In this document: one piece after another, positions 1 through 24,953 of the stretch
How positions within the stretch are numbered: the first letter of the stretch is position 1
Layout: the number at the start of each line of letters is the position of its first letter
DNA from: Mytilus californianus
Lineage: Eukaryota
Direction: 5' to 3'
DNA length: 64,000 bases
NCBI RefSeq assembly: GCF_021869535.1
Contig: NW_026262648.1
Coordinates: 806,001 to 870,000, forward strand
Notes under the pieces: generated by a model
The model's database searches: none
Told to the model about the DNA's origin: nothing
Seen by the model: the letters and a program-made list of their open reading frames with translations, nothing else
Position numbers and translations under genes: made by a program

Positions 1-2763
1 GCTATCAGTGCTCGCCTCAAAGTCTTAACAACCATACAATCTCAAAATTTGAGTGAAAGGCAAAAAAGAAAATTCCGTAGGGATGGCATCGAACATATCA
101 ATCCTTCTTTACCATCTGAAAAAAAAAGAGAAAACGAGTAAGGCGCTTTAAACGTAGGTCACTAGAGACTGATTCGCCCTCCAACATTGTGGTCAATCTT
201 TCCAAACACCAGTACACGGAAGCTGAAACATCTCTTCTCTCGAGAGGCTTAAATTTCTGTCCTTTACCTGCCCCTGTCAATGAAACTAAATTGTCGGAAG
301 ACCTTGACAATTTTGCCAGAAGTCTACGCATTAAAGAATATTTCGCGTCGAAGGAGAACAACAAAAGATGCTCGAATAGCGACTCAGAAATTTCAGAAGA
401 CGAAAACAACTACAAATTTATAAAAAAGAGTACTTGGATCCCTAAACCGAGCACAAATGCCACCTTGGAATCATTTATTGACAATTTTAAGTCGGACATT
501 ATTAGAATTACTAGAAATAACAATAAACCTTTTGACAATCTTACCAACGAAGAACGAACTGCACTGAAAAACTTACGATCTAACGACAGTATCGTCATTA
601 AACCTGCAGACAAAGGCAGTGCAGTGGTTGTCATGGATAAATCTGCCTATATTCAAGAGGCTGAACGACAACTTGGCGATGCAAGGTTCTACCAAAAACT
701 AGACTGATCCTACAACATCTTTTAGCAGAAAAATAACTGATAGTTTGGTAGAAATGCACAACGATGGTTTCATCGATGAAAAGACTCTAGAATATTTGAA
801 ACCAGAAAATCCAAAACCGGGCAGATTTTATCTTTTACCTAAAATTCATAAGGCCAATAACCCAGGAAGACCTATAGTTTCAGCGAACGGTCATCCGACG
901 GAAAAATATAGGAATTCGTTGACTTCCATCTTCGTCAACATGTTGAGGACTTACCATCTCACATCAAAGATACTACCGATTATCTTAGAAAATTGCAGGC
1001 CTTAAATCCACTCCCCTCCGACACGACACTTGTCTCTATGGACGTCACCTCCCTCTACACGAATATTCCACATGCAGATGGCATTGATGCGTGTAAAGAA
1101 GTTTGGAATTCCCGACCAGTGAAATATCCACCCACTGAATGCTTGGTCAAAATGCTCACGCTGGTACTCAAAAACAACAACTTCACTTTTAATGGAGACC
1201 ATTATCTGCAAGTTAATGGAACTGCTATGGGCACCAAAATGGCCCCATCATATGCCAACATATTTATGGACAAATTAGAAAAACATCTCCTTGAATCTTC
1301 CATCGAAAAACCGCTTTCCTGGTTTAGATTTATAGATGATGTGGATATGAAATGGAATAAAAGTGACGAGGATTTAGATACATTCATCACTCATGCCAAC
1401 AACATACATCCAAGTATCAAATTTACTCATGAGAAATCTAAATCCAAAATCACCTTCCTCGATACCTCCAGCTTGCTCACAGATGGCATCATATCCACTG
1501 ATCTATATTCTAAGCCTACTGACACTCACCAATATCTATCCCCTAAAAGTTGCCATCCTGCTCATTGTACTAAGAGCATCACGTACAGTCAGGCACCCAG
1601 AGTCAAGCGAATATGTTCCAACTCAGAAACAACTAAAAAACAACTACGTCAACTCGAAACCCGCTTGAAGAGAAGGGGCTACAAACACAAAACTATCCAA
1701 AAAGGCTTTCAGAAAGCGGAAACTATTCCAAGGAGTAAACTGTTAGAATACAAATATAAAAAAAAAGAAAAATAAAAGGACTCCATGTGTTCCTACTTAC
1801 CACCCATCTCTCAAAAACAGCTTCGGTGTCATTCGTGAGCATTGGAAAACAGTTGAAAAGAAGTCCAAACTATCCAAGATTTTTCCCGAGCCTCCCATGA
1901 TAGCTTTTAGGCAACCCAATAGTCTGCGTAACCTGCTGGTGCGGGCTGAAGTGTCTGATAATAGAAGTACTTCTGGAGAATGTCGTTCGTGTGATGAAAA
2001 ACGCTGCAAATGCTGCCTACAGATGCATCACTCATCAACTTTTCACAGTAAGGCAACAGAAAATAACTATAAGATATTTTGCAATGTTAACTGCAAAAGT
2101 ATGAATGTTATTTACATTCTAGAATGTTCGGTTTGTGGCCTCCAATATGTTGGTGAGTCAAAGCAGCCTTTCCACAAACGCCTCAATGGCCATAGGAGTG
2201 ATATCTCTAAGAAACCACTTCTCCCAGTTTCTCAGCATTTCAGACAGTCTGGTCACACACTTGATGACTTTAACCGCATGAAGATCCTAGTGATTGAACA
2301 GAACATTCACTGGAGTGATGCCCAGCGACAGGTTCGGGAAAGCTTTTGGATAAAGGAACTAAATGTACATCATCTAAACGGCATCAATAAAAAATACTAA
2401 GTTTTATTTTTCACTCATTTTGGGTTGTAAATATACACAGTCACGTATATTTGAGTATTGAGTTTTGTTTTATATTATGATGTTCAGGATTTTGGATTAA
2501 ATCAATAGACCAAAACTTACCTGTATTATTGAGCTATTTTTATACATATTATCAGTATTGTTAAAATACTTGACACCGAAGAAGGCTATTTGTTAAGCCG
2601 AAATATTTGTCAACACGATTTATTAACAACATCTTCGTATAATACCATCTTATATTAGTATCGTTGTGCAAATCTCCAGACTTATATAATTTTTTTTCCT
2701 TATCTGCACAGTATCGTCTATTCTAGACGATCCGGTACATAGTAAATTTGCTGGTTGGTCCTT
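1..2763 (+). mobile_element. Penelope-like retroelement (Neptune-type, RT + C-terminal GIY-YIG), frameshifted; starts before the window
   Basis: ORF pieces 189-707 (NLSK...LSRGLNFCP), 745-1005 (PGRFYLLPKIHK...GRPIVS), 993-1775 (DVTSLYTNI, GTAMGTKMAPSYA, FRFIDDV) and 1897-2400 (CxxxxCxxC linker, VIYILEC...QYVGES...RLNGH). The 3' UTR ends at (TA)n. Confidence 0.95.
2570..2613 (+). ncRNA. Minimal type I hammerhead ribozyme motif, U4C variant
   Basis: TTGACA-CCGAAGA-A-GGCT(8 nt)AGCC-GAAA-TATT-TGTCAA: stem I TTGACA/TGTCAA, stem II GGCT/AGCC, palindromic AAATATTT in place of stem III; lies in the PLE 3' UTR. Confidence 0.7.
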
Positions 2764-2777
2764 TATATATATATATA

Positions 2778-4090
2778 AAACCAGTCTAAAAGGGTACAAC
2801 ATCACCAAAAAACAGTTTCACCCGAACATCATCTGTAGAGACGCTAATAAATTTTTAAAATTTCCAAAAAACGACTCAAAGACATGCCTAAAATGAAAAT
2901 AGTAATTATAGATATGAACTGGCACAACTTTAAAATTCCAAAATGACGTCAGTTAAGATGTTACAACAACTGCGTGTAAATACATTCCCAAAAGAACAGC
3001 ACTGATCGATATAAGCTGGTAAAATATGACAAACAGAGGCTGCGTACTTATCATTCCAAATAAATAGCAGTTTTATAATGAAAAGAAAAAATAATAGTAA
3101 ATTTGGGCTAAGGTTAAAAGTTGGACGTGGATGCGTACTTGTATATCCCTACCAAATGAAAAGAACCCTTGTATTTAAACTAGTAAAATTCCAAAAATTC
3201 CAAAAGAATCCTTAAAACTGTAAGAGTCAAGTAAGGAAGCCGGAGTAACTGGAAACAAATGATGTCAGGAAAATGAGTGATGGTAGGAAAAATGAGTGAC
3301 TCATTCTATGTTTTTTCATTTATGCACTCTGGGGAAACTGTCCTTAGCTTTCTTATCCAAAACCTTTCCCGAGCAAGTCTTTCAGCCCTTGACCAACCCT
3401 CGTTGTGGTCTATGATTGTGATTGTGAGGTTTTTGAGATCAGCTTGGGCGTGCCCAGGTGATCTCAAATGACGACTTACGGGGAGGTCGGGCTTGCAGGT
3501 GTAGTCACTTCGATGACCATTCATGCGTTTGTTGAAAGTCTGTTCTGTCTCGCCAATATACTGCATGCCACATCGACACTGAAGAAGGTATACAACATTC
3601 TGTGTTTTGCAAGTTACATTACAAAATATAGTGTACACAGACCCAGTGGAGTGGCAAGTAAATGTTTGAGTATTCAGTATTTGTTGGCAAGTCAGACATC
3701 GTCTGTTACCACACGACTTGCACCATCCTGCAGTTGAATAGCTTTTATTAGAGGAGACGTCAGCTCTCACAAATAAGTCTTTCAGACTTGCTGGTCTCCG
3801 AAAAGCTAAGACAGGAGGATTGGGAAAGATCTTGGATAATTTTGGGTGATTGGCAATATTTATTAGCGTCTCTACATATGATGTTCGGGTGAAACTGTTT
3901 CACTTTTTTTATTGTATAGAATTCAAGATTGCTATAGTTTAATAATCAGAATAGATTTATCTGATTCATTTTACATCATGCTCATATTGATGAAGGATAT
4001 CTGTTATCCGAAATATTTATAGTTACATTTGTTCGTTTATTGTCATTTTTTGGTGATGTTGTACCCTTTTAGACTGGTTATATATTATAT
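2778..4090 (-). mobile_element. 5'-truncated Penelope-like element (GIY-YIG and 3' end) with an inverted copy of its own 3' end
   Basis: ORF 3306-3770 (CKSCGNRRCLTC, VVYLLQC...YIGET...RMNGH). 3860-3900 and 4050-4085 are reverse complements of 2778-2850. Confidence 0.9.
3983..4022 (+). ncRNA. Minimal hammerhead-like motif, C3U variant
   Basis: TTGATGA-A-GGATA(TCTGT)TATCC-GAAA-TATT with only a weak stem I; lies in the inverted PLE 3' end. Confidence 0.55.
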
Positions 4091-4147: not shown

Positions 4148-4276
4148 NNNNNNNNNNNNNNNNNNNNNNNNNNNNNNNNNNNNNNNNNNNNNNNNNNNNN
4201 NNNNNNNNNNNNNNNNNNNNNNNNNNNNNNNNNNNNNNNNNNNNNNNNNNNNNNNNNNNNNNNNNNNNNNNNNNNN
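4148..4276. other. Assembly gap (run of N)
   Basis: Run of N bases. Confidence 1.
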
Positions 4277-4476
4277 ACGATGTATGTATCACGAATGTTA
4301 AATGTTCAGGCAATTTCACAACAAATCAGAAAAAAAAAAGAAATAGAAGCATTTCTAAGATATTTATTTTTATTCCAGATAGTTGCTACATAGGTCAAAT
4401 TGGGAATAGATATATTGCAATTAGATAAAACATCAGTAAACTCAATTATTTTTAAGACATATTCTAAACTGCTTAC

Positions 4477-4628
4477 CTGGAATTATGCAGGTTGTCTCGT
4501 TAAAATTGTGAATATCTATGGTGGTTTTTGAATCAGTACATGTTCCTTCATAATACAGTGTTTGGTTTGATGCCCATTCTTTAAAATCAATTATGAGGCA
4601 GCATATGAATGGGTTTGTGTACATATTC
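4477..4628 (-). CDS. LRRCT exon (152 nt, phase 2 to 1), intact
   Basis: taag|G AAT ATG TAC ACA AAC CCA TTC... = NMYTNPFICCLIIDFKEWASNQTLYYEGTCTDSKTTIDIHNFNETTCIIP, ending at |gtaagc; NPF-x-C...W...C...C pattern. Confidence 0.85.
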
Positions 4629-7600
4629 CTTAAATATTAAATTCAATATAAGGTTAATTCCTATCTCATGTACTTAACCATGTGACGTCTGGTTTTTCAT
4701 ATTACTGCAAAACAATTTAAATTCCTGAGGGCAAAACATATGCAAGATACGGCAACAGCATGGAATTATATGAAACAACGACAAAGTATCATGCTGTTTC
4801 TATAGATATTTACAACAAGAGGTTTAAATCATCAAATCAACATAGATGGAGCTTTAAGTTAAACATTAAGCAAGGCATTTTATTACGCAAGAGGAACAAC
4901 TGTCCTACAAAACAATACTTGCAACACAACTTATTATTATATTTATGTTTTCAAGAACAGAACTTCTGGTAAACTTATTAAGCAGTTACCCTGTACAGTG
5001 CTATAAGAACATCCATTATTATAAATGCAAATCTGAAATAGGACAATGATGCTTAATTTACCATAAATTACAAATGTCGTTCTCCGTGTATTAAAAAGAT
5101 AAATATATTTTTTTCAAACTGATATTGCTTTGAACAGTAATATTAAATTATTGAACGACATTAAAATTTAAATAAAGAAGTAGAAATTAATAGTACGTAA
5201 ACAATAAAATGATAGTAAACCTGTTGAGGTGTTTGCACACAAGAATATTTTGAAGAACATCAGTTACATATGTGCATGATTAAATATCCAATACGACCTG
5301 TCATATGATAAGATAAACATGCTAACGTCTTAAATAAATTTAGGACACTGATACACACATTACCAAAGGTTTAAAAAAAGTATAACAAAAATACTAAACT
5401 ACAAGGCAACTCCATTAAGGGAATTTCATGAATACAGACAAAATCAAACGCTAGCAATCAATGGAACAAGTGAAAAACAACTGCCATATTCCTGACTTGG
5501 AAGAAAATCAAGTACTATCATGATTTTGTAAGATTATATTCTATCAAGACAATGGTTCTTGAATTATGCAAGATTTCAAAGACTAACCTTTCAATATAGA
5601 ATGAGATTAAGAGTAAAATGAGTATGTATAGATTAATCAATATTCGAGTCAAATGCACCTGTCACATGCGTGGTTTGAAATCACTAGTTCAGTGTTGACA
5701 GGCTTGTGATACAGTAAATAAACTACATAAACTACCTGGCCAACAAGGTCCCTTACATGTATAGAAGAACATCAACTATATATGATCGTTATAGGAATAT
5801 GATGCAATCTATTATAGGATAAAGGCTAAAATAAGAATCAATCACACTTACAAATGTCAAAGCTTTGGGTTCGATGATTACATACCAACTGGTAAACTTG
5901 CTCCTATGTAAAAAGTAAAATCACAAAAATACTGAACTCCGAAACGGAATGTCCCTAATCAAATTGCAAAATCAAAAGTACAAACACATCACACGAATGG
6001 ATAAGAACGTGTTAAATCAAGACAATACTATTCAAATAACCAACAGGAATTCTAGGATCAATTTTGAAATATTGAATAACATTAAAAGTTCAATAAACAT
6101 GTACGACGGAAATGTTCATAGACAATATAATGGTGATACACCTGCTAAACTATTGGCACACAAGTATATTAAAGAGCAAAGGGTACATATTAAAGAGGTT
6201 CAAACATCCTTATAATATTAAATACGGCTAAGTCTGATATAAATGATTTTCAATTACACAAACATATATTAAGATTTGCACCGTGTTCAAAATGAACAGG
6301 CCTTCTGGTAAATTTCTCACTTGTTATTTGGTAAATATTTTATATAAAATCAATGATCATGAACATACTTAATAATGTTGATGTTGATGTATTTTTTATT
6401 GCAAAACTATTAAGTTGTCGGCACTTACGTATATCGAAGAACATCAATTATATATGTACGTGACTATATAAACAAAACAAGTTAATATAGATTAGAGTCT
6501 GTGATAAGCATGAATCACAATTGGAATTCTTGTATCTTGGTGTTTGATGATAACAGACTATCTGGTAAACTTTCTTAGTTGTTATTGGCTACAGATTTAA
6601 TTTAAAATATTGAATAACATCAAAGTTAATTAAGCCTGTGAGATGAAAGTGTTCATACACAATAGAATGGTGATAAACCTGCTGGGCTGTTGTTATACAA
6701 GTATATAAAAAATACCGGGTACATGTACACAAGGTTAACAATTCCACACAATATTAAATAAGTTTAAGCCTGTTATAAATATCAATTGCACTTAGAAGTA
6801 TTGAAGATTTGCGTTCAAAGTTAACAGACCTTCTGGTCATCTTTCTTAATTGTTATTCAGTAAATATATATTAGAAAATCTATGATCAGAAACAAACTTA
6901 ATAAACCTACTGATATTTAAATTACAAAACATTGCAAAGGACTATCTTCAGTTATTTAATGGATCAAATGTATTTGTCAACCACCTAATACTGTGGATGT
7001 AATATTAATTGCTTCAAAGTTCAAACTCGGCACATAAGGATATTGAAGGACATCAGATATGTTTGTACATGATTAAATACTAGTATATAATATATAATCT
7101 AATCTAAAATAAAATTAAATAAAGTCTGAGACGAACATAATTCATACTTACAATGATAACAGATTCGTGTTCGACACAAATAGATCTTTTGGTAAACTTA
7201 TTAAGTTGTTCGATTCTATATATCTGGAAGAAAATCAATTATCATGATCATATTAGAACATGTGACATTGATACATTGATACTGAACTTACCAAAGATTA
7301 CCAAGTTCGATCTCCTTTTATTCAATAGATAACATATATATTTCTTCAAACTGACATTGTTGATGCATTTCGTTAAGCTTTCAACTGCAACTTATAAATA
7401 TTGAACGACATTTAAAGTAATATTGGTATACAAAAAGAAAGTTTGCAAACAAATTTAAATGATGGTAAGATGTTTATACACGAGCATATTGAGGAACATC
7501 AGTTATATAAGTACGTGATCATATAAACAAATAAATCTTCAATATTTCAATAAAATAAAGTATTTGATAAGCGTTATACATAATCAATATTCTTGCAACA

Positions 7601-10600
7601 TAGTGTCGATTATAAGAGACTATCTGGTAAACTTACTTAGTTGTAATTGGCTACAACTTTGAAATAAAATCAATCATCTTGAATATGTAAAAACATATTT
7701 AATCAAGACAATAATACTCAAATTACCAATAGGAATTCTAAGATTATTGTTTTAATATTGAATAACATTAAAAGTTTAATAACCATGTAAGAAAGAAGTG
7801 TAATAGAAGGGTGATAATTCTTGTAACATAGTGTTCGATGATCACAGACTAGCTGGCAACCTTACACTATTGGCACAGAAGAATATTAAAGAACATAGGG
7901 TTTAACATTCAAAACACTTAAATAAGTTCAAGTCTGATACCAAAATAAATTACACTTACACAAAGGAGTAAGGGCAATAAGGGCCAAAATCGGCCCCATC
8001 TTAGAACAAATTCATTTTTTCTGAAAATCATGCCGAAACTATCCACTTCATAGAACATAAAAGATTTTGTTCATATCTCAAGCCGTTTTCGCGTAAGAAA
8101 CTTTCAAAACTAATGACAGATAAATAAAAAAATCCTCTTTTTTCATGGAATATTTTTATTTGTACCTGTTTTGAAATATCAATGTAGCACATACTGTTTT
8201 AACATTCAGTTATTTTTCAACTCATACAGTGTACAAATGCTATTTCATAATATTTGTTTACAATTCATTTTACTTATAATAACACAGTTACCGTTGCTAT
8301 GGCAACAGAAACCTACATAAAAAATAATCAAATCATAGATAAGCGCTTCCAGATAGCTTCGGTGTTTAAATGTTGAACGATATATTTTTCTTAAACTTCT
8401 TTAAAGACCTATGGATCAATAAATTTTCGATTTTCAATATAAACATAAGTAAACCTTGGTGTCATAACCTTGTTTTTTTTTCGAAAACGTTGAAATTAAC
8501 AAAACCACCAGTTATTTCATAAGGTTAAATAGGAGAAATCTCATTTTTCCTTATTTAGGAAAAAAAAAAGAATTAACAATAGGCATATGCATACAGTATT
8601 TTTTATCAAAGAATATTTATTAATTCTGCATTATGTGACAAATTATTCTATATTTTCTGCAATCCGCAATATTCCGTGAGCAAGCCTGAAGGAATGGATA
8701 TACTCTGATTACTCAAGTCACAAGCTATAAAGTAAAAAAAAAATGTCATTATGCTTTATCATGAACATATGTTTTGATGAGTTATGTACCTATTTGTTAA
8801 ATCGTACAATTACTTGCAAGTAGTCATATGAAAAACATGTATATGAAGAAATATGTTGAACTAGTAACTCAACATACAAGAAAACATGAAGTTATTGTCG
8901 GAGAGATTCGAGAAAAAAAAACACACAAACTACAACTTGATAGGGTTGGTCGCTGACAAAATATGATGACATTCTGACATGTATATTAGTTTTGAGAAAA
9001 GAAATATTTGGAAAATATTTGTTTGACAAACGCACGGTCATACGAATGGATAAGGTGATTAAAATAGTAGAAATGTGATGTATTATACATAAAATACACA
9101 TTGGGTCACATATCTAATAACCCATATAAAAAAAATGAGCTACTACGTACAGCGACTATCTAATGATTTCCTACGGTTTGAAATATAAAAGAAATGGATT
9201 CAGTTATTTTAACCCGTGCATTGAACTATCTTTCTGTAAGTTTTAAAGAACATGGATTGTTTTTTTTTCATATACACTAATACATAAAACCGGAGAGTAC
9301 ACTTTTACATAAGACACATTTCCTGATGACAGACACAATTTTGTAGAAGTACGATTTAAGATAAAAAGGAACCAAGCAAATTAACAACTATTCTTTCAAT
9401 TCTGTACAATGTCGGAGGAAGCAGTTGGTAAAAACATTTCCAGACATATTAAATGATATACACTGTAAAATGTATGGTTCAAAAAGGAATTAAACGTTTT
9501 GTCATTTCTTTCAAATTAAAAAACAAATAATGAATTTTCACGTCATTCACTCTTCATCATTTGCTTCGTCGTTGTCACTTTCGTCAACAGTAACTGGATC
9601 TGGCAGGTTACGAGCATCAAGAAGATATTTGCTCCAATCACGACAGTTTTCAAAAATTCTATCCGTGTACTTTCCAATACCAAGATACCAAATTAAGGCC
9701 GTAACATGAGAGCAAGTTCCTACAACACGACTTCCGGCTTTGCACTGGCAATACCAACCCACGACACTAATGTCATCATATTTAACCCATACACGATAGC
9801 ATTTTGATGATATATGCCTTGATTGAATTTTAGCACACAAAAGATTCTCTTCATGGTCATATGTAAAAACTTCATAATAACCATCGTCATCTAGGTGTTC
9901 TCTTGTATAACTTGGAGCAAGTTTTAGTTGGTAGACTCCAACAGTAATATTTCTTATATCTTCTTCTGATAAACGGGGAAAAGTAGGGGCGGATGAAGCA
10001 TCAATCTTTTGCCATTTACAAGAACGTTTGTCAAGGCCTTCCTCTATTATTTTCTCATGGAGTAAGTTCTTTTGCTTTGAAAGATAAAGCATTTTAGACA
10101 CCAATTGTTCATCTTGTTCTGAGTCCCCTGTATTTAGTTCTTGCCAATATTTATTCATAATTGCACAGGCAATATTGACATAATCAGATACAAATGGAAT
10201 CTGGCTATGTGGTAGAACTCTATCTAGATATTTCCATGACTTAATGTGGCCATTCACGGACTCTACCACCCAACGGATTTTTGTAACTAGTCTTGTTACG
10301 TTGCTGTCTTCAACTGGAAGTTGAGACTCCCCTTTTTTATTAAAAGCTGGCATTTTTGTTTGGATACCCATTTCTTGCAGTAAATCAAGTGCATCTCGGA
10401 AACCCCGGTCGACAATCATAATGTCATCCTCAGTCACCCATTCTTTAAATTCCTCAATGTCATGTTGAATGATGTGCTTCATTATTTGTGCATCGTTGTT
10501 TTTGCCGTCGCTAAAGTACGGTCCAATTACACTTATAATGTAACCAGAAGTTGTTACAAAGACCATTGGTTTAACCAATGGTCGATGTTTGTGCATACTA

Positions 10601-13600
10601 TAGCATTTACGTTGGAACTTGAATTGTGAACTTTTCTGGATATGAATATAAGTGCCATCTGCGACTATAATTGCTGGATACATTCCTTTTCCAAACAGTG
10701 ATTGCGCTAGAGGTCGAGTATGCGATGTTATAACCTCTTCCCTACTTATATGATTAAATCCTAGATTAGAGGGAACAAGATTGTCAGACAAGAATTTTCT
10801 AGCTGATGCAATAGCACGTCTAACAGAATCTTTACCAAAATTAAAAAGTGTTGATAAAAGTTTATTGGATAAACCAGACTTCAGTTTGGTCAAAAATATT
10901 CCAATACATGTCCGAACACGTAAGTTACCCTTTTGGACAATTGAACATAGGTCATTAAAGTTTTCCTTAGAAAGGCCTGTCAGATTTAAAATGTCTGAGC
11001 TTGTAAGTGCATTTTCTGTATCAAAATCAATTTGCCGCTTGCTTCCTCTCAATGCCATATCTCGGATTTGCATAATAAGGTCCATTAAGTCAGTACGGTT
11101 GAAAATGGACGAAGACTGCGAATGTGAAATTCTGTCAAGTGCATCAGGTAAAAATATTTCATTGCACAAGTGACCTGGACAACATCTGGCACCAACTGTG
11201 AGAACAATGAGTTTATCCAAAAATAAATTAAATCTAGCGTTTGTTGGGACGACTACTAGCTTTGGGCCTCGGCGTTTACACACAACACACTGCGAATGGC
11301 CACCTCCAGCTGATGGTATAGGCAGTGCGATACTTGGCGGAGATTTACATGGATGACATCTAGCATATTTTGTTGGAGGGACGTACTCCGTGTCATCATT
11401 ATTTAATTCAGATATTGTAGTTTGTATGGGGCATCTTACATTTGTGTCAATTTCTCGAGAGCATCGTATTCTGCATTTATTACATATAACACTGTTAGTG
11501 TGGTTAATTTTGTCCTGTTCAATGAAAAACTTCTGTTGTAAACATTTACGCAGTGATTTATTGTTGGGTCCTATGAGTTTCCGCCTGTCTCTGGTTTTTG
11601 GTCTCTTTGAACACAAAATGCAAGTATAGTTTCTGGGCGTTGACATTCTCTGATAATTAGAAATAGAAATATTTAAACAGATAGGATGAGGTAAATCAGA
11701 ATAACATACTGAATATCCTTAGTGTGATTTAAAATTATAAAATACAATATCGTAAAATGTTTTAGTCTGAGAATATCATGGTGCGTATGTTTCTTAGTTT
11801 AGTTGTGTGTATTTGTCTGCGCACGTGTGTGTGTGTGTTTACGTTTTTGTTAATTTACATGCAAATTCCATCACGAAATATCAGTTTTGAAATATGCTAT
11901 ATTCAACCCTGATTGTTTATATACTTAATTATCGTTTAACGTTTAAACGGACAAAAGTGTTTAAGTCAGTATCAAAATTACGGATAGTTAATAATAATAA
12001 ATAAATCTTAAAGTCTTCATATATTAGAAAATTACAACCTAAAACATGAATACAAAGATGTAACGGATAAACATTAATGGGACAGGAAACCACCACCCCT
12101 ATAACAACACACACACACACAAAAGACAAACAGAGGGAAACATATAATATTCAACAAAATAATGTATACTCAATATGTAAACCTCTAAGTCTTCTCGAAA
12201 TGTAGATAATGCATGCTCTCATCAAGATACGTTTATCATAATTACTAGAAGTTAAAACACGCAGTCAATTTATCTTAACCCTAGACTCACCTTAAGGTCG
12301 TGAGTTCCTATCAGGAACCGACATATTCCTTTCACCCAGCATACACTTGCATTGTTTAAGCCAGCTGAAAATCTGTTGAAAAAAATGAAGATTATCAAAA
12401 TAATGTATACTTATACTGAACTAAATATGACAGGGTATTACGTAAACATTTTATGTTGAGAAAGTTTATTAAAATTACTATAAAAATATCAATAACCATT
12501 TCTCAATTTAAAGATAAAAGATTATTACTTCTATAGCCGCCCACTATAAACTGTCAAAAAGTAGTCTTTTTGTTTCTGTGCCTGATAATACAATGTTATC
12601 AATTAATCATCATTCAAACATAGGTTTAAACTGTTTATTCGAGCACAAATGCTTTAAGACATGAATCAGTTAAAATAAGGAATACCTTATTAAGGGACCA
12701 TTAAGTATGTAAGTGACAACTGCTAGTACATACTGGTGAAGTACAATGTCTCTATTCAAAATACCATGTATACTGCTCTTCAGTAAATATCTATAAAAAA
12801 AACTTCATCATTCAAAATCATTTTTTAACACGTTATGACAATATTAAAAAAGTATTTATGCATTTATGCAAAAAAAAAAAATTACAAAAAAAGTGTTGAG
12901 ATTTGAACCTGGCATCTCCGTACTGCCAGCATGACTATCTTATCCTCACGACCATCCCGTCAACTGTTTATCATTCGTTAATTTACAGGAACTTGAATTC
13001 AACAGTACGTTAGAAAAGTTTCTTCATCATACGACACCTAAGAAACTAATACTGTTTTAACATAAACTTCAAATTGTAGGATAAATTGTGATCTTTTCAC
13101 TGTTTATTTTTATGTTTATATTCATAATATAACGTTATAGAAAAGAAACACACAAAAGTTTCCTAGTATCGATACAAGTAGTTTTCATACCCCGTAAATT
13201 TCTTTTTTTTTGTCATCGCCCGGCAATATTTATATTCAACTGTAAAATAAGGACATTTCTGGTAAAGATACCAATTCATTTTTGGTATAACTTAGTTTTC
13301 AAATGGATTGATGTAAGCTTTTTAAGTTGAAATGATCGTGTAAATACTACCGTGAGAAGATTAATATTTTAAATATGATAAACTGTACGGAACCCCGCAT
13401 ATTTCTGTTGAGATAAATTGATAAGTAAAATAATCAACATACCCTTTTGAATTACAACCGAAATTAATAATCCTTTGACAGCTATTCTCTAAAGTTGAGC
13501 TAAGTAGATCAGGTCTAAAGTACTGCTGGTAACTATAGACGTTTCCCTTTTGTGGTTGTCCTAAAAGATGTCTTCAATAATCTGAACCGGTTTTTTTCAA

Positions 13601-16600
13601 ATTTCCGAAACTACTTTTTTATGCTCATGTTATATATATAAAGTGATCAGAGAAACTAAATATTTTACATGTCGCAAATCAATTAATTAAATGTAAAATT
13701 AAGTTCTATACTGATTTTTAAAAAAATTTATTTCTGTTTTTTTTTCTATTTTTTATCAGAATTTGTTTGACAACATGCCCTGGCCCCAAGTTTGTGTCTC
13801 TATTCGATCCACAGTCATATCACTAATAAACCATGGAAAAGACTAAGAAGACTAAAAAAAGGTTTAAAAACAATCCACTTTGAGATGCATAATATTAATT
13901 TGCATCACATGGAAGTTATAAGTTGTATTTGCGAGTAAACTGGTTATCTGAAAGGGGTATAACGTCAGGTGTTCAATGCCTCCCGAGAAGAAACGATTCC
14001 GCTTTTGACAAAAAAATTCATACCCTCCGCAGGCATGTGCCAAAAAAATATTTTGCTACTATTTTGTTTGTTTATAGTTCCTTTTATCGTTCAAAGGAAA
14101 TTTTGGCACATGCCTGCGGAGGGTACGAATTCTCGTAAAATGTACTGAAAATCTTTGTATTCTAAGCAATAATTACAAATCATGGCGTTTTCGAGGTTCT
14201 ATTGTGACGTCACGGAACGTGATTTTTGCCGAAAATAACATGTTTTCTGAAAACACACTTTACAATGATTATTTTAGTTGGTAATATGTAACTGTGAAGG
14301 AACTTCGTATTTTTGTGAAAATTGGGGCCGATTTTGGCCCTTATTGCCCCTACTCCTTTAAGGTTTGTGTTGAATGTAAACAGACCTTTTGGTAAACTGA
14401 CTAACGTGTTATTCTCTAAATCTCTGAAAAAAAATCAATTATCATGATTACGTTAGAACATGTTACATTAAAACACGACTACTGAACTTACCAAATATTA
14501 CCAATGTGATCTCCTTGTATTCAATAACATTACACTAGACGATAAACCTGTTGAGCTATTGTCACACACTTATATTAAAACACCTTTCTATAACCTTTTA
14601 ACCTGATTTAAAATCAAATATGATCGTTTAATAAGTTTAAGTCTGACATATCATTTCTCAAGTTGACTTGGAAAGCAGTCAAAAAGTCTGCTCCAAGTTA
14701 ACGTTTGTACTGGTTAGGACTGCACACATCGGTAGATGTACGTGATTATATAAACAAAACAATTTTTAATAAAATAAAGTTTGTGTTCAGCATTAATCAC
14801 AATAATAATTCTTGTAACTTGGTATTTGATGATAACAGACTATCTGGTAAACTTTCTCAGTTGGCTACAATTTTGGATTAAAATCAGTCATCTTGATTAT
14901 GAATATCAAAAACACTGGATATATATGAATAAAGCAGACAATTCCACACAACATTTAATAAGTTATTAGTCTGATATAAATATCAATTGCACTTACAAAT
15001 ATTGACGATTTGCGTTCAATGTTAACTGACCTTCTGGTAAACTTTCCAACTTGTACTGAAGTAAATATCTAATAGAAAATCAATCATCATGAACATATTT
15101 ATTTAACCTACTTACATTCAAATTACCAAACATTTCAATGGTTGAACTTCAGCTATTCAATGGATCAAATGAAATTGTCATCAACCTGATATTGGTGGTG
15201 AAATTTGTATTGCTTTAACATTCAGCATTATCTAACAAAATTAAAATATACTGATGACAACACTACTATATGTTCTCAACACACAAGTATATTTAAGAAC
15301 AGCAGATATGTGGTGTACGTGATTAAATATACAATTTAAATGATATATGTAAGAAAAGGTCTGAGATGAGCATAAATCCTACATACAATGTTTTAAGCTT
15401 TTTGTTGTTAGAAAACATTCCTTCTGGTAAACTTACTAACATGTTAAATTCTATATATCTAGAAGAAAATCAATTATCATGATTATGTAAGAACAATTGA
15501 CATTTAAACACCGATTCTGAACTTACCAAGGATTACCATATTCGATCTCCGTGTATTCAATAGATAAAATATATTTGTCTTTAAACTGATATTATTGATG
15601 CATTTTTAAAGCTTGCAAACTAAAATAATGCGTTATATTTTATGTAACATTAGTAAACACAAGGAAAGTTTGCTTTAAAAATTTAATGATGGAATATTCA
15701 GAGTTGTCGACACACAAGTATATTGAGGAACATCGATATCCAGATTGGAGCAATCCTAACCCGTACAACAAGTTATCTTGCTAACCAGTAATATTGACTG
15801 GTCAAAGTTAACCTGTGACAGGATTTAGGACTGCTCTGACCAGTCCTAGGACCACAATCAAGTTAACTTGAAAAGCAGACTTGTTTCGGACTTCTCTTAA
15901 ACTGAGTTTTACTGTGCGTACTGTTGTACGTTTGTCTTTTCTACATTGGCTAGAGGTATAGGGGGAGGGTTGAGATCTCAAAAAACATGTTTAACCTCGC
16001 CGCATTTTTGCGCCTGTCCCAAGTCAGGAGCCTCTGGTCTTTGTTAGTCTTTTATCACTTTTAATTTTAGTTGCTTGTGTATAATTTGAAGTTAAGTATG
16101 GCGTCCATTATCACTGAACTAGTATACATATTTGTTTAAGGGCCAGCTGAAGGACGCTTCCGGGTGCGGGAGTTTCTCGCTGCATTGAAGACCAATTGGT
16201 GGTCTTCGGCTGTTGTCTGCTCTATGGTCGGGTTGTTGTCTCTTTGACACATTCCTCATTTCCATTCTCAATTTTATTGGTCCTAGGACTGGTTTTATGA
16301 CTGGCGAAAAAGTTAACTTGGATACAGGTCCGCTACTTTTATAAGTTAACTTCGAAACCAGTCCAACCATAAGTTAACTTTGATTTTGAGAACTCAGATC
16401 AAACCAGACATGATCTCAAGTTAACTTTTGGCTGGTCTGCTCAGCACTAAATTAACTTGTAACCAGGACCGCTCTAAATCAATTGTTTTTGTAAATATTT
16501 TAAAATGTCTTTGTTTTATATAAACAATACTTATTAAGTACATGAATTTTTAAATAACGTACGCAGTGCGTGTTATACACATTTCTCTTTGTCGTAGCAT

Positions 16601-19600
16601 TAATCTTATACACTTGGTTCTCAAATAAAATCGATAAAAAATAACGAATAGTACTTAGGTTGTATACAATAATAATGATAAATGAAAGCAATATTGGTGT
16701 ACAGTTACTGATATTTATCATGCTGCAATATCGGCTTACTAATATTTCCTTTTCTGCACCAATTAATAGTGCAAGCATGTCCTTATGTTATTCAAATAAT
16801 TGAATCATAAAAATCAACAGTTTTCACGTCTCAGACTGGCTCAAATATAGCAAAATTATTTGACCGCATCAACAAAAACTGACAATATTTGAACTTTATT
16901 ATGTAAATCTATATAGCCACATAGTTAATCAGTAACATTTTTATATCAGGCTGGATTGTATAATACAAATGACAGCAATATTGGAACACAATGACTACAA
17001 AATTGTGTCTGTATCAATGTAAAGTGCCAGCATGTCTCCTTTTTTTATTCAAAATATTGATTCTTAACAAAATGTCAGTAGTTTGATTGCTCAGATTGAA
17101 TTGTATAACAATATTATTTGCCGCATCAACCAAAACTGACCATATTTGCACTTGATTATGTAAATTAATATGGCCGCATAATAAATCAGTAATATATTTT
17201 ATGCCAGGATGGATTGTATGATACAAATGACAACAATATTGGAACATAATGATTACAATATTTTGTCCATATCAATTTAGAGAGCCACCATGTCCTCTTT
17301 TTATTCAAAATATTGACTTGCAACAAAATTTCAGTAGTTTTGATACCTCAGGCTGACTCGTGTAACAACAATTATTTGACCGCATCAACCAAAACTGACC
17401 ATATTTGCACTTTATTATTAAAATCTATATGGCCGCATAATAAATCAGTAATATTTTTATGTCAAGAAGGATTGTATAATACAATAAACTCATCACAGAT
17501 ACCAGGATTAAAATTAAGTACCTGCGCCTCAGGCTGTCTCGTTTTACAAAATTATTTGACCGCATCAACCAACACTGACCATAATAAACATAAGAAAGTG
17601 CAAATATGGTGAGTTTTGGTTGATTCATAATAATATTTTGTGATACGAGTCAGTCTGAGCTATCAAAACTACTGAAATTTTGTTGCGAGACAATATTTTG
17701 AATGAAAAGACGATATGCTGGCAATCTATATTGATGCGGACAACATTTTGTACTCATTGCGTTTCAATATTGCTGTCATTTGTATTATACAATCTATCAT
17801 GACATAAAAATATCTCTGATTTTTTTATGCGGCTCTATAGATTAACATATTACAGTTCAAATGTGGTCAGTTTCGGTTGATACGGTCAAATAATGTTGTG
17901 ATACTAGTCAGCCTAGGGTATCAAAACTACTGAAATTTTGTTGTGAGACAATATTTTGAATAAAAAAAGGACACGCTGGCAATCTTAACTAATGTCGACA
18001 ACATTTTGTAATCATTGTGTTCCAATATTGCTGTGATTTGTATTATACAATCAATCCTGACATAAAAATATTTCTGATATTTTTGTATGCGGCTTTATAA
18101 ATAAACATAAGAAAGTGCAAATATGGTCAGTTTTGGTGGATACGGTCAAATAATTTTGTGACAATAGTCAGCCCGAGGTATAAAAACTACTGAAATTTTG
18201 TTGTAAGACAATATTTTGAATTAAAAGAAGACATGCTGGCAATCTTAATTAATGCAGACAAAATTTTGTAATTGTGTTCCAATATTGCTGTTATTTGCAT
18301 TATAAAATCTATCCTGACATTAAAATATTTCTTATTTTTCATGCGGCTATATAAATAAACTTAAGAAAGTGCAGATATGGTCAGTTTTGGGCGATGCGGT
18401 CGACAAATTTTGTTGTACTAGTAAGCCTGAGGTATCAAATGAGATGTGAAAAATGCCGATTTTTGGTGTTGATTCAATTATTTTAATAAAAAAAAAGAAC
18501 ATGCTTGCGCTGTTGATTGGTGCAGAAAAAGAAATATTAGAAAGCCGACCATAAACATGATAAATAACAATAACTGTAAACCAATATTGCTTTCAATTAT
18601 CATGATTTGTTTATGTGATCTTAAGTCCTATTCGTAATTGGGATTGTTTATCGATGTTATCTGATAACCAAGTTTATAAGATTAATGCCACATTTTAAAA
18701 CCGATTATAACTTTCAACATTTTATATAAAATAAATGTATATACGACTTTAAAAATTTGATATTTATTAGAATATATATTCAATGTCCGTTAGCATTGTA
18801 ACCAATGTCGTTTTCAATTGATAGAAAGGCAGATCACGGATAAATTTTTATTGTACGATTAAAAGTTTTATGCGTATATTTTTTTAAAAACATGTATTTA
18901 ATCTGTATTGTTTATATAATGGAAATATTATATTAACCTTACTTTCTATGTTTATACTAAGAAACAAGTAAATTAATGTGAGCAGACCAGCCAAAAGTTA
19001 CCTTGAGATCAGGTCTGGTTCGATCTGAGTGGTCAAAATCAAAGGTAACTTATGTTAAGTTATGGAAGGACCGGTTATGAAGTTATCTTATAAGAATAGC
19101 GGACCTGTTTCCAAGTTAAATGTTTCGGCAGACATAAAACAGTCCTAGGACCAAGTCCGTTTTTATTGTTAACTTGATTGTGGTTATATGACGGATCAGA
19201 GCAGTCCTAAATCCTTTCACAGGCAACTTTGACCAGTCACAATGACTGGTTATCAAGTTACCTTGCTGTACAGGTTAGGACTGCACCCATCTGTAGGTCT
19301 AGTTTACCAACGACGAAGTTAAATTGCTTTTCTGCTTAAAATGTCTGAAGTTAACTTGATAAGCAGTCAAAACGTCTACTTCAAGTTAACTTCTGTACAG
19401 GTTAGGACTGCACACATCTGTAGATCTACGTGATTATCTAAACAAATCAATCTTTAATAAAACAAAGTTTGTGTTAAGAATTAATCACAATAATATTACA
19501 ATTCTTGTATCTTGGTGTTTGATGATAACAGACTATCTGGTAAACTAACTTAGTTGGCTACAACTTTGAAATAAAATCAGTCATCTTGATTATGTATATC

Positions 19601-20231
19601 AACAACACAGGGTACAGGTGAACAAGGTAGAAAATTCCACAGAGCATTTGATAAGTTTAAGTCTGATATAAATATCAATTGCACTTACAATTCAAGTCAG
19701 GAATATGACAGTTGTTATCCCTTCGTTTGAGGTGTTTGAGCTTTTTATTTTGCTATTTGATTAGCGACTTTCCATTTTGGATTTTCCATGGAGTTCAGTA
19801 TTTTTGAAATTTCACTTTTTACAAATATTGAAGATTTGTGTTCAATTTTGATATACCTCTTGGTCAACTTTCCCACGTGTTAGTCAGTCAATATCTAATA
19901 GAAAATCAACGATTATGAATATACTTAATAGACCTACTGATATTCAAATTGCCAAACATTTCAAAGGTCTTCAGTAAATTAATGTAATTTTAATTGCTTC
20001 AAAAGTCATAGTTAAATAGTGACATAGTTAAACTTGGATGATATCAAAACTGCTGAGTTCTTGGCACATACGTATATTGAAGATATGTTTGTAAATGATT
20101 AAATATATAATATAATCCAAAATAAAATAAAGTCTGAGATGAGCATAATTAATACTTACAATGTTTCAAGATTCGTGTTCGAAAACAACAGATCTTTTGG
20201 TAAATTTACTAAGTTGTTAGATCCCATATAT
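4477..20231 (-). CDS. Multi-exon LRR + LRRCT gene (extracellular LRR receptor-like), partial; mix of intact and pseudogenised 72-nt exons; may be a pseudogene overall
   Basis: The recurrent plus-strand motif CTGGTAAACT is the reverse complement of AGT TTA CCA G (S-L-P). Exons are bounded by AG/GT in phase 2-2 and translate to xLxxNxLxxLPxxLFxxNxxLxxL. Confidence 0.8.
4928..7661 (-). pseudogene. Dead LRR exons at about 4928-5000, 5852-5910, 6255-6335, 6525-6596, 6790-6861 and 7590-7661
   Basis: The SLP(E/D) LRR frame is recognisable but carries stop codons, indels or mutated splice sites. Confidence 0.75.
7152..7223 (-). CDS. Intact 72-nt LRR exon
   Basis: ttcttccag| YIESNNLISLPKDLFVSNTNLLSL |gtaagt. 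Confidence 0.85.
9547..11646 (-). CDS. DDE transposase, 699 aa: N-terminal Cys clusters, HTH, DDE_Tnp_4-like core, C-terminal SWIM finger
   Basis: Motifs ADGTYIHIQK, VDRGF, IRWVVESVNGHIK; SWIM-like CQCKAGSRVVGTCSH; N-terminal CxxC...CxxC and CxxC...CCxxH. Confidence 0.9.
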   Translation of the reverse strand: MSTPRNYTCILCSKRPKTRDRRKLIGPNNKSLRKCLQQKFFIEQDKINHTNSVICNKCRIRCSREIDTNVRCPIQTTISELNNDDTEYVPPTKYARCHPCKSPPSIALPIPSAGGGHSQCVVCKRRGPKLVVVPTNARFNLFLDKLIVLTVGARCCPGHLCNEIFLPDALDRISHSQSSSIFNRTDLMDLIMQIRDMALRGSKRQIDFDTENALTSSDILNLTGLSKENFNDLCSIVQKGNLRVRTCIGIFLTKLKSGLSNKLLSTLFNFGKDSVRRAIASARKFLSDNLVPSNLGFNHISREEVITSHTRPLAQSLFGKGMYPAIIVADGTYIHIQKSSQFKFQRKCYSMHKHRPLVKPMVFVTTSGYIISVIGPYFSDGKNNDAQIMKHIIQHDIEEFKEWVTEDDIMIVDRGFRDALDLLQEMGIQTKMPAFNKKGESQLPVEDSNVTRLVTKIRWVVESVNGHIKSWKYLDRVLPHSQIPFVSDYVNIACAIMNKYWQELNTGDSEQDEQLVSKMLYLSKQKNLLHEKIIEEGLDKRSCKWQKIDASSAPTFPRLSEEDIRNITVGVYQLKLAPSYTREHLDDDGYYEVFTYDHEENLLCAKIQSRHISSKCYRVWVKYDDISVVGWYCQCKAGSRVVGTCSHVTALIWYLGIGKYTDRIFENCRDWSKYLLDARNLPDPVTVDESDNDEANDEE
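14016..14130. repeat. Internal hairpin in the transposon subterminal region
   Basis: 14021-14045 is the exact reverse complement of 14101-14125, with a 55-nt spacer. Confidence 0.9.
14360..14424 (-). pseudogene. LRR exon split by the transposon insertion (its donor site is at 7954-7959)
   Basis: ttttcag| DLENNTLVSLPKGLFTFNTNLK runs directly into the TIR; gtaagt lies just beyond the other TIR. Confidence 0.75.
14807..14872 (-). pseudogene. Dead LRR exon (66 nt); paralogous copy at 19500-19565
   Basis: Both copies have the same 6-nt deletion, a stop at the same Leu codon and a CAA acceptor. Confidence 0.75.
14997..15068 (-). CDS. 72-nt LRR exon, open frame but with consensus substitutions
   Basis: tattag| YLLQYKLESLPEGQLTLNANRQYL |gtaagt. 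Confidence 0.6.
15387..15458 (-). CDS. Intact 72-nt LRR exon
   Basis: ttcttctag| YIEFNMLVSLPEGMFSNNKKLKTL |gtatgt. Confidence 0.85.
15893..16278 (+). repeat. High-copy short interspersed repeat; related copies at about 29950-30100, 31140-31435, 53640-53960, 54140-54420, 55820-56140, 57760-58030, 61975-62340 and 63790-64000
   Basis: Shared cores CCTGTCCCAAGTCAGGAGCCT and/or TTGTCTCATTGGCAATCATACCACATC; more than one subfamily. Confidence 0.8.
16800..18430. repeat. ~258-bp tandem repeats arranged as two head-to-head arrays
   Basis: The anchor CCGCATCAAC is at 16864, 17121, 17380 and 17560; reverse anchors are near 17619, 17875, 18135 and 18389. Confidence 0.9.
20160..20231 (-). CDS. Intact 72-nt LRR exon
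   Basis: tccttcag| YMGSNNLVNLPKDLLFSNTNLETL |gtaagt. Confidence 0.85.
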
Positions 20232-22234
20232 CTGAAGGACAATCAATTATCATGATTATATAAGAACATATGGCATACAAAAACCTGATACTGAACTTAC
20301 CAAAGATTTTCAAATTCCATCTCCTTATACATGTTATATTTAATCGATAAAATATATTTATCTTTAAAGAAAAAATTCTTGATTTTTTACTTATCTTATT
20401 ATGTTCATAATAACATACAAAACACATTCACCAAACTGTATTTATATATAAACAATAATAAAGAAGAATATTGGAAATTATTAATTGCCTTTATTTGGAA
20501 TATACCAGTTTATTGTGACATACTTTTAAACTGGGGCATGCCGGGAATGGAATTAATATCAATTCAAGTCTTGCTCGTTTATCATTTAAAAAATATGTTA
20601 AAGCACATCGATGAATGTTTTGAAAAGCTATTAACCAACTCCTAATCCAAAAAATAAAACGAACAGTCGTGCAACATCTCTAAATTCTTATGGTAACGGC
20701 AGATATATATTTCATAGATTTCTATTGTGCTTATAGTAATAAAAGTAAATCGTACAATAAAAATGTTTTGTTAAAAAAAAAATTCTGACGGATATGTTGA
20801 ACGAATATATATAACTGATAATTTGATTACAATGAATGCATGTTTTCTGACTTTAATTCAGTCTAGCAAACATTTCCCCGCTAGTCGTGGTTAAATTCCC
20901 AGTAAAAAAGTTAGCATTCTGTGAATCTATTCTGTTGATCTTCACTCGAGTGTATTTAAGACTCCAGGGTTCACCTGTCCAAGTGTGACTAACATCTCGT
21001 AAGGATGATAAGAGAGAATTGCGAGTTTCAGACACAAAAAATAAAGAAGGAATTAAATTATTTGGGGAGGGGGGCGAGATGGTGGCAAAATACCTGGATC
21101 ACCGTTGTATATTTTTTTTATACTTTGCGTAAGGTCAGTTTTAAATAAATTATGTCAGATGAATATTTTATTGTGATGATAGACTACTGAATTTAGTCTT
21201 TATTGAATAATTTTATAAACAGAAAAGGCCCCCAAAAAAGAGTGTAAACTAAGAAATGTTCTAAATGTGCATACAATATTATAAATTTGCATTTATATAT
21301 GTTTATTTTACTTTATTTACGGAAATCTTTTACTCTATCGGAATTCTTTTACTTGTATTAAATCTGGCGATGTATATTTAAAATGCGACCTGGTGAAAAA
21401 TATCGAAAACTACCTAAATGGTAGAGTGTTCAATTGAAAAAACAAAACCGTTGGAGAACAATGTGCATGATTATCGGTATTATTTCTGTACGACTGTTCT
21501 TTTGATCTTTATCCGAGTATTCATGTATATAAACAAAAATAATTTAATATTCAGAGGGGAGACAGGGTGGCAAATACATTGATTTCCGTGGAATATTTTT
21601 TTTATCTTTTGCGTTTGCTCCATTGCCAATTATGTAATAAATCATGAAATATTAAACATGTATTTTACAGAATAATGATTCGGGAAATTAAAGATGTATA
21701 GAAAAGGACAAAATAGCATTGAAATAATTTGGTACCTCTGAAGCGCTGTTCACTAACCCCATCGGGAACCCTTTTATTAAAGTATTTGAAAATTGCCGTG
21801 TAAAATTAAAAAAAAATGTATAATTTTTTTTTCAATATTGGTGTATTAGACCTATAACGTGTCCGACTTTTACGGTGCATTCAAAGTGACTATCGCACCT
21901 ACAGCGGTTTCACCCGGAGTCTCAGTAAAAAAATCTTGTAAAGATCTAAATAATTACTTTTTAACAGAATGTTGATAACACGGTTATATCAATAATAGAA
22001 TAAAGTATAAATACAAGCTTATTAGATAATTAATGTTTCCGTTATTGCTTATTGTTTAAGAAAACAATTCTTGATCAAAATTTTTCAATATTGATCATAT
22101 GAATAACTTTAATTCACTTTATATTGTATTTATATGAATTGGAGCGTATTTTTTCATAATACGAAGATTTATATATGGTTGCTAAAATTGTCTGTTGACT
22201 TTGTCGTGGTTAATAGCATGGGTACAAATGTACG

Positions 22235-22238
<4 letters not shown>

Positions 22239-22284
<46 letters not shown>
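22239..22284. repeat. (TA)n microsatellite at the 3' end of PLE 3
   Basis: Pure AT dinucleotide run. Confidence 0.95.
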
Positions 22285-22287
<3 letters not shown>

Positions 22288-24555: not shown

Positions 24556-24953
24556 AAGATTGCATGGTCAGTCTTCCAACATGCTTCAAACGGGCTATGG
24601 AAAGAGTTTACATACCAGATATCTGCTACCTGTTCGCTGTTGCAGGGAAAATGAAGGAACACGGTACAGACACTAGGACCGATGGTAAAATCGTAGTCTG
24701 CGGTCCAAGTTTCCAAACTTAAGTCTGTACCGATAATCAAGTCCGCATTTAAAGGTAAATTCTCGAAAATAGAGTATTGAAGGTTGACATTTTTCTATCA
24801 TTGGGCAAATTCTCAAGTGTTTATTAAAAAAAAGGTTTGTGGAGGATTCACAGTGTACTTTAAAAAAAATGACAATATCCCAGAAAATACATTTACATCT
24901 TCCAACGCATTCTCCTACCAAAAAATTATAATTCACAATGTCAATGAAGATAT

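What the first reader, a model, noticed from the sequence alone, without database searches (positions are those of the whole stretch)
4477..20231. Hidden LRR receptor-like gene built by exon birth-and-death
Invisible in the ORF track. About 14 72-nt, phase 2-2 LRR exons lie in tandem ~1.05-kb cassettes (about 6455-7510, 14730-15740, 19420-20400). Four exons (20160-20231, 15387-15458, 14997-15068, 7152-7223) keep AG/GT and an open frame. Each ends in TT and the next starts with A or G, so every junction makes Leu and they join in frame to the intact LRRCT exon at 4477-4628. Because all exons share a phase, any subset gives a valid protein, so LRR number could vary by splicing or by haplotype. 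Exon structure is seen directly; that the gene is alive and variable is inference.
Basis: partly seen in the sequence, partly recalled or inferred. Interest (0 to 1): 0.72.

Follow-up and report, generated by a model that had tools for sequence, protein, structure and literature searches.

The report
Truncated mussel LRR-thrombospondin gene copy
The one-repeat exons are real, but this locus is a 5'-truncated, transposon-damaged copy of a secreted leucine-rich-repeat plus thrombospondin-repeat gene of the California mussel, not a hidden live receptor gene.

Summary
The minus strand of 4477-20271 carries 16 copies of a 72-nt, phase 2-2 LRR exon with conserved intron flanks, plus an open LRRCT exon at 4477-4628.

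The genome is Mytilus californianus. The family encodes secreted proteins of about 310-350 aa: signal peptide, LRRNT, LRRs, LRRCT, then a TSP1 repeat. No transmembrane segment was found, so it is not receptor-like.

A RefSeq model on chromosome-scale contig C35 uses exons of exactly this design.

This copy, on scaffold C68, is a duplicate or structural haplotype of the gene at C35:32.85-32.89 Mb, with 2.5-2.8% substitutions.
- It has no signal-peptide/LRRNT exon and no upstream LRR array anywhere on C68.
- A 6.4-kb Spy-type transposon splits the exon homologous to the last LRR of a Mytilus edulis relative.
- The LRRCT-to-TSP1 intron is about 41 kb (2.7 kb on C35), with satellite, Penelope-like elements and an assembly gap.
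- One of the four "live" exons is a pseudoexon type that has merely stayed open.
- About two RNA reads touch the LRRCT exon, and none touch the LRR exon at 7152-7223.

It is most likely a gene fragment or pseudogene. The scan had already noted this family on other DNA of this genome.

The parts
4477..4628 (-). LRRCT exon. Open, AG/GT, enters in phase 2 and leaves in phase 1. Identical in nucleotides to the C35 copy. Residues 1-50 of RefSeq protein P0001 start at its second codon.
4926..5000 (-). Decayed LRR unit with stops. It is also decayed in the paralogs.
5852..5923 (-). Decayed LRR unit: no AG, stops in frame.
6260..6337 (-). Decayed LRR unit: indels, no AG.
6519..6596 (-). C-type pseudoexon: AA in place of AG, and a stop.
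6790..6867 (-). B-type pseudoexon: stops, no AG.
7152..7223 (-). A-type LRR exon, intact. No RNA reads in the run sampled.
7573..7650 (-). Decayed C-type unit.
7960..7964 (-). Last 5 nt of the split LRR exon, followed by its GTAAGT donor.
7965..14356 (-). Spy-type (PIF/Harbinger-related) DNA transposon, 6392 bp. It has 33-bp terminal inverted repeats that begin GGAGTAAG and an intact 699-aa DDE_Tnp_4 ORF at 9547-11646. It sits between AAA and TTT with no target-site duplication. The site is empty in the C35 copy.
14357..14423 (-). First 67 nt of an A-type LRR exon cut by the transposon. The exon is intact in the C35 copy and ends in GT, giving a Val junction. It is homologous to the last LRR before LRRCT in M. 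edulis protein P0003.
14801..14872 (-). C-type pseudoexon.
14997..15068 (-). B-type unit that is still open with AG/GT but has lost the conserved Asn. The same unit has an 8-nt indel in the C35 copy. The B type has no usable in-phase donor or carries stops in the other copies inspected.
15387..15458 (-). A-type LRR exon, intact.
19489..19563 (-). C-type pseudoexon.
19823..19894 (-). B-type pseudoexon with two stops.
20160..20231 (-). A-type LRR exon, intact. It is the most upstream unit of this copy.
4277..24549 (-). Block collinear with C35:32857658-32871728, at 93.5-96.6% identity with indels and 2.4-2.8% substitutions. Homology stops at 24549 and, at the low end, at the N gap.
4148..4276 (.). 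Run of N (assembly gap or masked stretch) inside the LRRCT-TSP1 intron. I did not fill it.
189..3770 (.). Penelope-like retroelement pieces (RVT_1 and GIY-YIG ORFs) inside the expanded intron. They are absent at this place in C35.

Best explanation
The window holds the middle and 3' part of a duplicated copy of a Mytilus californianus gene for a secreted LRR-TSP1 protein. It could also be a structurally variant haplotype of that gene.

In this family each 24-residue LRR is one 72-nt exon in phase 2-2. The junction codon encodes the conserved Leu. The exons were amplified in cassettes of two or three units, and most units have since lost their splice sites or reading frame. Only the A-type units serve as exons.

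The full gene order, seen in the sister gene on C35, is:
1. a signal-peptide/LRRNT exon
2. the LRR exons
3. the LRRCT exon
4. a TSP1 exon
5. a short tail

The C68 copy keeps three intact A exons, the LRRCT exon and, about 41 kb downstream and outside the window, the TSP1 and tail exons. It lacks the 5' exon and the upstream array. A Spy transposon lies inside the exon homologous to the last LRR of a Mytilus edulis relative (P0003), where that LRR joins straight to LRRCT.

It therefore cannot make a secreted LRR protein by itself, and it is most likely a non-functional fragment. The structure is shown directly. Non-function is inferred.
For: Exon units and splice sites.

Family identity: a profile of six open LRRCT exons finds 32 proteins. 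The sampled members were scanned with Pfam and have the LRRNT/LRR_8/TSP_1 architecture. P0001 equals XP_052086131.1 and XP_052089328.1 of M. californianus and is recorded on 2 contigs.

Sister gene on C35: all exons from the signal peptide to the tail are present.

C68 copy:
- The TSP1 exon is at C68:769432-769608, and the tail exons lie in L019.
- Homology with C35 runs from C68:755500 to 830549.
- The 5' exon has 12 copies in the genome and none on C68.
- The upstream array has no close copy on C68.
- The transposon lies in an exon whose site is empty on C35.

Family splicing: exact exon mapping of the live paralog, and isoforms that differ by one exon.

Secretion: no transmembrane segment.

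Expression: RNA depth is about 1 on the LRRCT exon only, none on 7152-7223, and no splice joints.
Against: The LRRCT, TSP1 and tail exons show 2 substitutions in 384 nt between the two copies. The non-exon rate of 2.6% predicts about 10 (my own Poisson estimate P about 0.002). So the 3' exons of both copies have been under constraint or were homogenised.

RefSeq appears to annotate the same 126-aa protein on both contigs.

Only about 6% of one RNA run, of unknown tissue, was read. Its LRRCT reads cannot be assigned to either copy, because that exon is identical in both.

A new 5' exon unrelated to the family's own would have escaped my searches.
Confidence: 0.7

Rival explanations
1. The C68 block is not a paralog. 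It is the second haplotype of the C35 gene, left unpurged in the primary assembly. On this reading it is a structurally variant, probably null allele, of the presence/absence kind common in mussels.
For: Substitution divergence of 2.5-2.8% matches the genome-wide heterozygosity of 2.73% reported for this individual (PMC9710001). Order and orientation are kept over at least 30 kb of C35.
Against: Window 52000-54436 is unique to C68, and homology ends abruptly at 24549. Three DNA samples from two studies show both versions: 37 of the 40 variant letters listed are the C35 letters. Where both versions are seen, k-mer depth is about 1:2 rather than 1:1. This is a weak measure.
Confidence: 0.3
2. 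The copy is a live gene. It is transcribed from an unrecognised 5' exon, its open LRR exons are spliced to the LRRCT and TSP1 exons, and LRR number varies by exon skipping.
For: Three A exons, the LRRCT exon and the TSP1 and tail exons are all open. The 3' exons are constrained. A few RNA reads lie on the LRRCT exon in the gene's orientation. The family shows exon skipping in a paralog.
Against: There is no signal-peptide/LRRNT exon on C68 and no upstream array. The exon homologous to the last LRR of P0003 is broken by a transposon. The LRR exons diverge at the neutral rate, 6 substitutions in 283 nt, 4 of them amino-acid changes (and my own mapping). No reads fall on exon 7152-7223.
Confidence: 0.12
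3. The cassettes are donor units for lamprey-VLR-like somatic assembly or gene conversion, not exons.
For: There is an array of LRR cassettes beside an incomplete gene, and the language-model look-alikes of the LRRCT exon include VLR fragments at low scores.
Against: All units share one orientation and carry splice sites. Homologous units are ordinary spliced exons in RefSeq proteins that map exactly to germline DNA. DNA runs show no rearranged joints other than at repeats.
Confidence: 0.01

Closest known systems
Mytilus secreted LRRNT-LRR-LRRCT-TSP1 proteins. Examples: M. californianus 'protein slit-like isoform X1' (P0038), 'carboxypeptidase N subunit 2-like' (P0035) and 'semaphorin-5A-like' (P0001); M. 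edulis CAG2235010.1 (P0003).
   Same: Same exon design (72 nt, phase 2-2). The LRRCT exon has the same CC...C...C pattern and is 70-76% identical to five paralog exons. A TSP1 exon follows in phase 1. P0001 is identical to this locus's 3' exons.
   Different: This copy lacks the signal-peptide/LRRNT exon and the upstream LRR exons, has a transposon in one exon, and has a 41-kb intron where the sister gene has 2.7 kb.
Vertebrate and invertebrate extracellular LRR proteins with one LRR per 72-nt exon (Slit, glycoprotein-hormone/LGR receptors). From my own knowledge, not tested here.
   Same: Single-repeat exons all in one phase, so exon duplication or skipping keeps the frame.
   Different: Different domain partners (EGF/LamG, or a 7TM domain). 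Here the array is young and full of pseudoexons that were carried along with live exons.
Lamprey/hagfish VLR loci
   Same: Many LRR cassettes lie near an incomplete LRR gene with an LRRCT.
   Different: VLR cassettes are copied into the gene somatically and have no splice sites. Here the units are germline exons or dead exons.
Spy group of PHIS (PIF/Harbinger-ISL2EU-Spy) DNA transposons (PMC4122938)
   Same: Insertion exactly between AAA and TTT without a target-site duplication, a TIR start that fits GGANNNNG, and one long DDE transposase ORF.
   Different: I made no phylogeny of the transposase. At 6.4 kb the element is long for a one-ORF element.

Membership tests
Mytilus secreted LRR-TSP1 family | Single-LRR exons of 72 nt in phase 2-2 with AG/GT | tested here: met
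   for the window. One search shows the same design in an exactly mapped RefSeq protein of a paralog.
Mytilus secreted LRR-TSP1 family | LRRCT exon with four conserved Cys (CC...C...C) | tested here: met
   (six open copies, Cys invariant). (profile hits down to E = 6.7e-27).
Mytilus secreted LRR-TSP1 family | TSP1 exon directly after LRRCT | tested here: met
   It lies outside the window at C68:769432-769608 and is identical to P0001 residues 50-102. Pfam TSP_1 E = 1e-11.
Mytilus secreted LRR-TSP1 family | 5' exon with signal peptide and LRRNT | tested here: not met
   There are 12 copies in the genome, detected down to 77% identity, and none on C68. No tblastn hit in the window.
Mytilus secreted LRR-TSP1 family | Transcribed and spliced | tested here: inconclusive
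   About two reads on the LRRCT exon, none on 7152-7223, and no joints. Only 6% of one RNA run was read, and the LRRCT exon is identical in both copies.
Membrane LRR receptor (TLR-like or receptor-like) | Transmembrane segment and/or a TIR or other cytoplasmic domain after LRRCT | tested here: not met
   LRRCT is followed by TSP1 and a short polar tail. No hydrophobic 19-mer lies beyond the signal peptide in 10 family proteins.
Semaphorin-5A (the RefSeq name of the 126-aa model) | Sema and PSI domains | tested here: not met
   Pfam finds only TSP_1 and TSP1_spondin in P0001. The name rests on the TSP1 repeat alone.
VLR-type somatically assembled receptor | Cassettes without splice sites that are copied into an incomplete germline gene | tested here: not met
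   The units carry AG/GT and are germline exons in paralogs. No cassette-to-cassette DNA joints were seen.
Spy DNA transposons | Insertion between AAA|TTT with no TSD, TIR start GGANNNNG, single DDE ORF | tested here: met
   Filled site versus empty site on C35, DDE_Tnp_4 in the 699-aa ORF, criteria taken from PMC4122938.

The most novel reading that the evidence does not exclude
The Mytilus LRR-TSP1 family may use its arrays of same-phase LRR exons combinatorially. Exon skipping, plus copy and haplotype differences in exon content, would then produce a varied set of secreted binding proteins. On this reading the C68 copy is a segregating structural variant that still contributes transcripts.
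Probability: 0.07. Interest if true: 0.6.

Novelty: new member of a known kind. Interest (0 to 1): 0.3.

Why it matters
For annotation, RefSeq models this locus and its sister only as a 126-aa 'semaphorin-5A-like' stub and misses the LRR exons. The family names (slit-like, carboxypeptidase N subunit 2-like, platelet glycoprotein V-like) hide one lineage-specific family of about a dozen genes.

For biology, the locus is a clear example of how same-phase repeat exons are amplified together with dead copies, and of how a recent Spy insertion can knock out an exon. It gives copy-specific markers for testing presence/absence variation in mussels.

It does not reveal a new kind of system.

Tried and rejected
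- Pfam scans of single exons gave nothing useful: 23-50 aa is too short.
- The ESM Atlas gave only low-score LRR-cap leads for the LRRCT exon.
That the second accession of P0001 lies on C68 is therefore inferred from the exon matches.
- A 19-kb own-genome search of the upstream flank was swamped by repeats.
- dN/dS of the LRRCT exon among paralogs is about 1 with tiny counts and decides nothing.
- Literature searches found no paper on an LRR-TSP1 family in mussels.
- The ShK gene upstream could not be a 5' partner, because it is on the + strand.
Exons were searched one by one, by reference.
- The N run was not filled.
Full report
**Observation**

The gene sense is the minus strand. It finds 16 units at E<0.01 and 3 weaker ones. 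All are on the minus strand and fall in three blocks: 4921-7972, 14341-15498 and 19465-20271. The intron flanks are as well conserved as the exons.

The units 20160-20231, 15387-15458, 14997-15068 and 7152-7223 pass all tests. Each starts with A and ends in TT.

The LRRCT exon at 4477-4628 is open and has AG and GT. It starts with G, so the junction codon is Leu. The three cassettes are 69-86% identical to one another.

**What the gene is**

Single exons are too short for Pfam. LRRCT exons of five paralogs fetched from the same genome are all open, with four invariant Cys. A profile of these six sequences, searched against 1.84 billion proteins, gave 32 hits.

The best hit, P0001 (126 aa), is identical to the window's LRRCT exon from its second codon. 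It then continues into a thrombospondin type-1 repeat (Pfam TSP_1 E = 1e-11). It is XP_052086131.1 and XP_052089328.1, 'semaphorin-5A-like' of Mytilus californianus, recorded on two contigs, the longer of which has the length of C35. This names the genome, and its size and GC content fit PMC9710001.

Full-length relatives have a signal peptide, LRRNT, six to eight LRRs, LRRCT, one to five TSP1 repeats and a short polar tail. Examples are M. edulis P0003 (349 aa) and M. californianus P0038 (335 aa). None has a hydrophobic segment after the signal peptide. The family is secreted, not receptor-like. Close relatives were found only in Mytilus species.

**How the family is spliced**

P0038 maps without a mismatch to C35:10135326-10148980, apart from its last seven residues, which I did not place. 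The mapped exons are:
- a 5' exon
- seven LRR exons of 72 nt, each with AG, a first base A, and TT followed by GTAAGT
- the LRRCT exon
- the TSP1 exon

P0039, labelled isoform X2, is identical except that it lacks exactly one of these exons, 24 residues. That locus also holds two open units whose acceptor is GG, and three decayed ones. Pseudoexons are therefore normal inside live members.

Units come in three types. A-type units are the ones used as exons. Of the 13 B-type copies inspected, 12 have no usable in-phase donor or carry stops. C-type units have AA for AG, stops, or both in most copies. Dead units were therefore copied along with live ones.

**What this copy is**

The window is C68:806001-870000. 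Window 4277-24549 is collinear with C35:32857658-32871728.

The C35 gene is complete. It has a 5' exon, a first LRR exon, an upstream array with five intact exons, a lower array, LRRCT, TSP1 2.7 kb further on, and the tail.

On C68 the TSP1 exon lies at 769432-769608, about 41 kb below the LRRCT exon, and the tail exons follow it. Collinearity continues at least to C68:755500. The expanded intron holds:
- an array of at least 18 kb of a 539-bp satellite, of which C35 has a single unit at this place
- Penelope-like pieces at window 189-3770
- an N run at 4148-4276

Upstream, homology stops at 24549. The 5' exon has 12 copies in the genome and none on C68. The C35 upstream array has no close copy on C68. 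Window 52000-54436 is unique to C68. The copy is therefore 5'-truncated.

Window 7965-14356 is absent from C35. It is a 6392-bp element with 33-bp inverted ends and an intact 699-aa DDE_Tnp_4 ORF. It sits between AAA and TTT with no duplication, and its ends begin GGAGTAAG. These are the marks of Spy transposons (PMC4122938).

The element cuts an LRR exon 5 nt before its end. That exon is intact on C35 and ends in GT. In P0003 the homologous LRR joins straight to LRRCT through a Val, which is what GT+G encodes. So the exon broken here is the one homologous to the last LRR of that relative.

**Selection and expression**

Between the two copies, non-exon DNA differs at 2.5-2.8% of sites.
- The LRRCT, TSP1 and tail exons differ at 2 of 384 sites.
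- The four A-type LRR exons differ at 6 of 283 sites, and four of those change the protein (and my own mapping).

The 3' exons thus look constrained or homogenised, while the LRR exons do not.

Of one RNA-seq run from the genome project, about 6% was read. Depth was about 1 on the LRRCT exon, in the orientation expected for a minus-strand RNA, and zero on 7152-7223. There were no splice joints. The LRRCT exon is identical in both copies, so these reads cannot be assigned to either.

In three DNA samples, 37 of the 40 variant letters listed are the C35 letters, and contigs of the window's own version occur as well.

**Paralog or haplotype**

The divergence equals the reported heterozygosity of 2.73%, which fits an unpurged haplotype. 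Three things favour a separate locus: the unique flank, both versions in all three DNA samples, and a depth ratio near 1:2. I leave this open. Either way the copy lacks its 5' part.

**Verdict**

The exon-duplication reading is right for the family. The claims of a live, variable, receptor-like gene are not supported for this locus. Earlier notes of this scan on other DNA of the same genome (s1-340015, s1-342871) reached the same family reading. I found them only after reaching mine.

Noticed in passing
window 7965-14356: A full-length Spy-type DNA transposon, apparently young. Its 699-aa DDE ORF is intact, its 33-bp inverted ends are nearly perfect, it is inserted at AAA|TTT, and the site is empty in the C35 copy.
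   Followed up: partly
C68:786001-804500 (just below the window) and C35:32857013-32857426: A 539-bp satellite forms an array of at least 18 kb in the C68 intron. The C35 copy has a single unit at the same place.
   Followed up: partly
G000:C88:23536562-23554357: Nine LRRCT-exon-like copies in tandem, about 2 kb apart, with a family 5' exon on the opposite strand at C88:23558506-23558798. Protein P0004 has three LRRCT-like stretches. This is an odd arrangement and I did not read it.
   Followed up: no
L021+L022 (C35:10135000-10149500): RefSeq isoforms P0038 and P0039 of a live paralog differ by exactly one 72-nt LRR exon. Two further open units there have GG in place of the AG acceptor.
   Followed up: yes
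L017+L018 (C35:38494270-38514269): This paralog has at least 27 LRR units in 10 kb, ten of them intact. Residues 1-70 of the RefSeq protein P0035 did not map exactly to this stretch, so the model may skip eight intact-looking exons in favour of similar ones further upstream.
   Followed up: partly
window 16846-17484 and 17583-18439: Two arrays of a 258-bp repeat in opposite orientation inside an intron. They are shared with the C35 copy and with C35:32891852-32893370.
   Followed up: no
window 5400-5526 and 5902-6026: Short dispersed repeats with very high depth in all DNA runs. Nearly all the RNA reads laid fall on them, and the RNA joint and loose ends listed lie at them.
   Followed up: no
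window 51737-51847 and 60634-60744 (+): Two ShK-like six-Cys motifs on the + strand. They belong to the other gene noted in this window and are not a 5' partner of the LRR gene.
   Followed up: partly
window 22593-24549 and 24600-26500: A reverse-transcriptase element (ORFs at 23039-24531) is shared with C35. Just past the homology break at 24549, window 24600-26500 is a dispersed repeat with many 87-95% identical copies across the genome.
   Followed up: no
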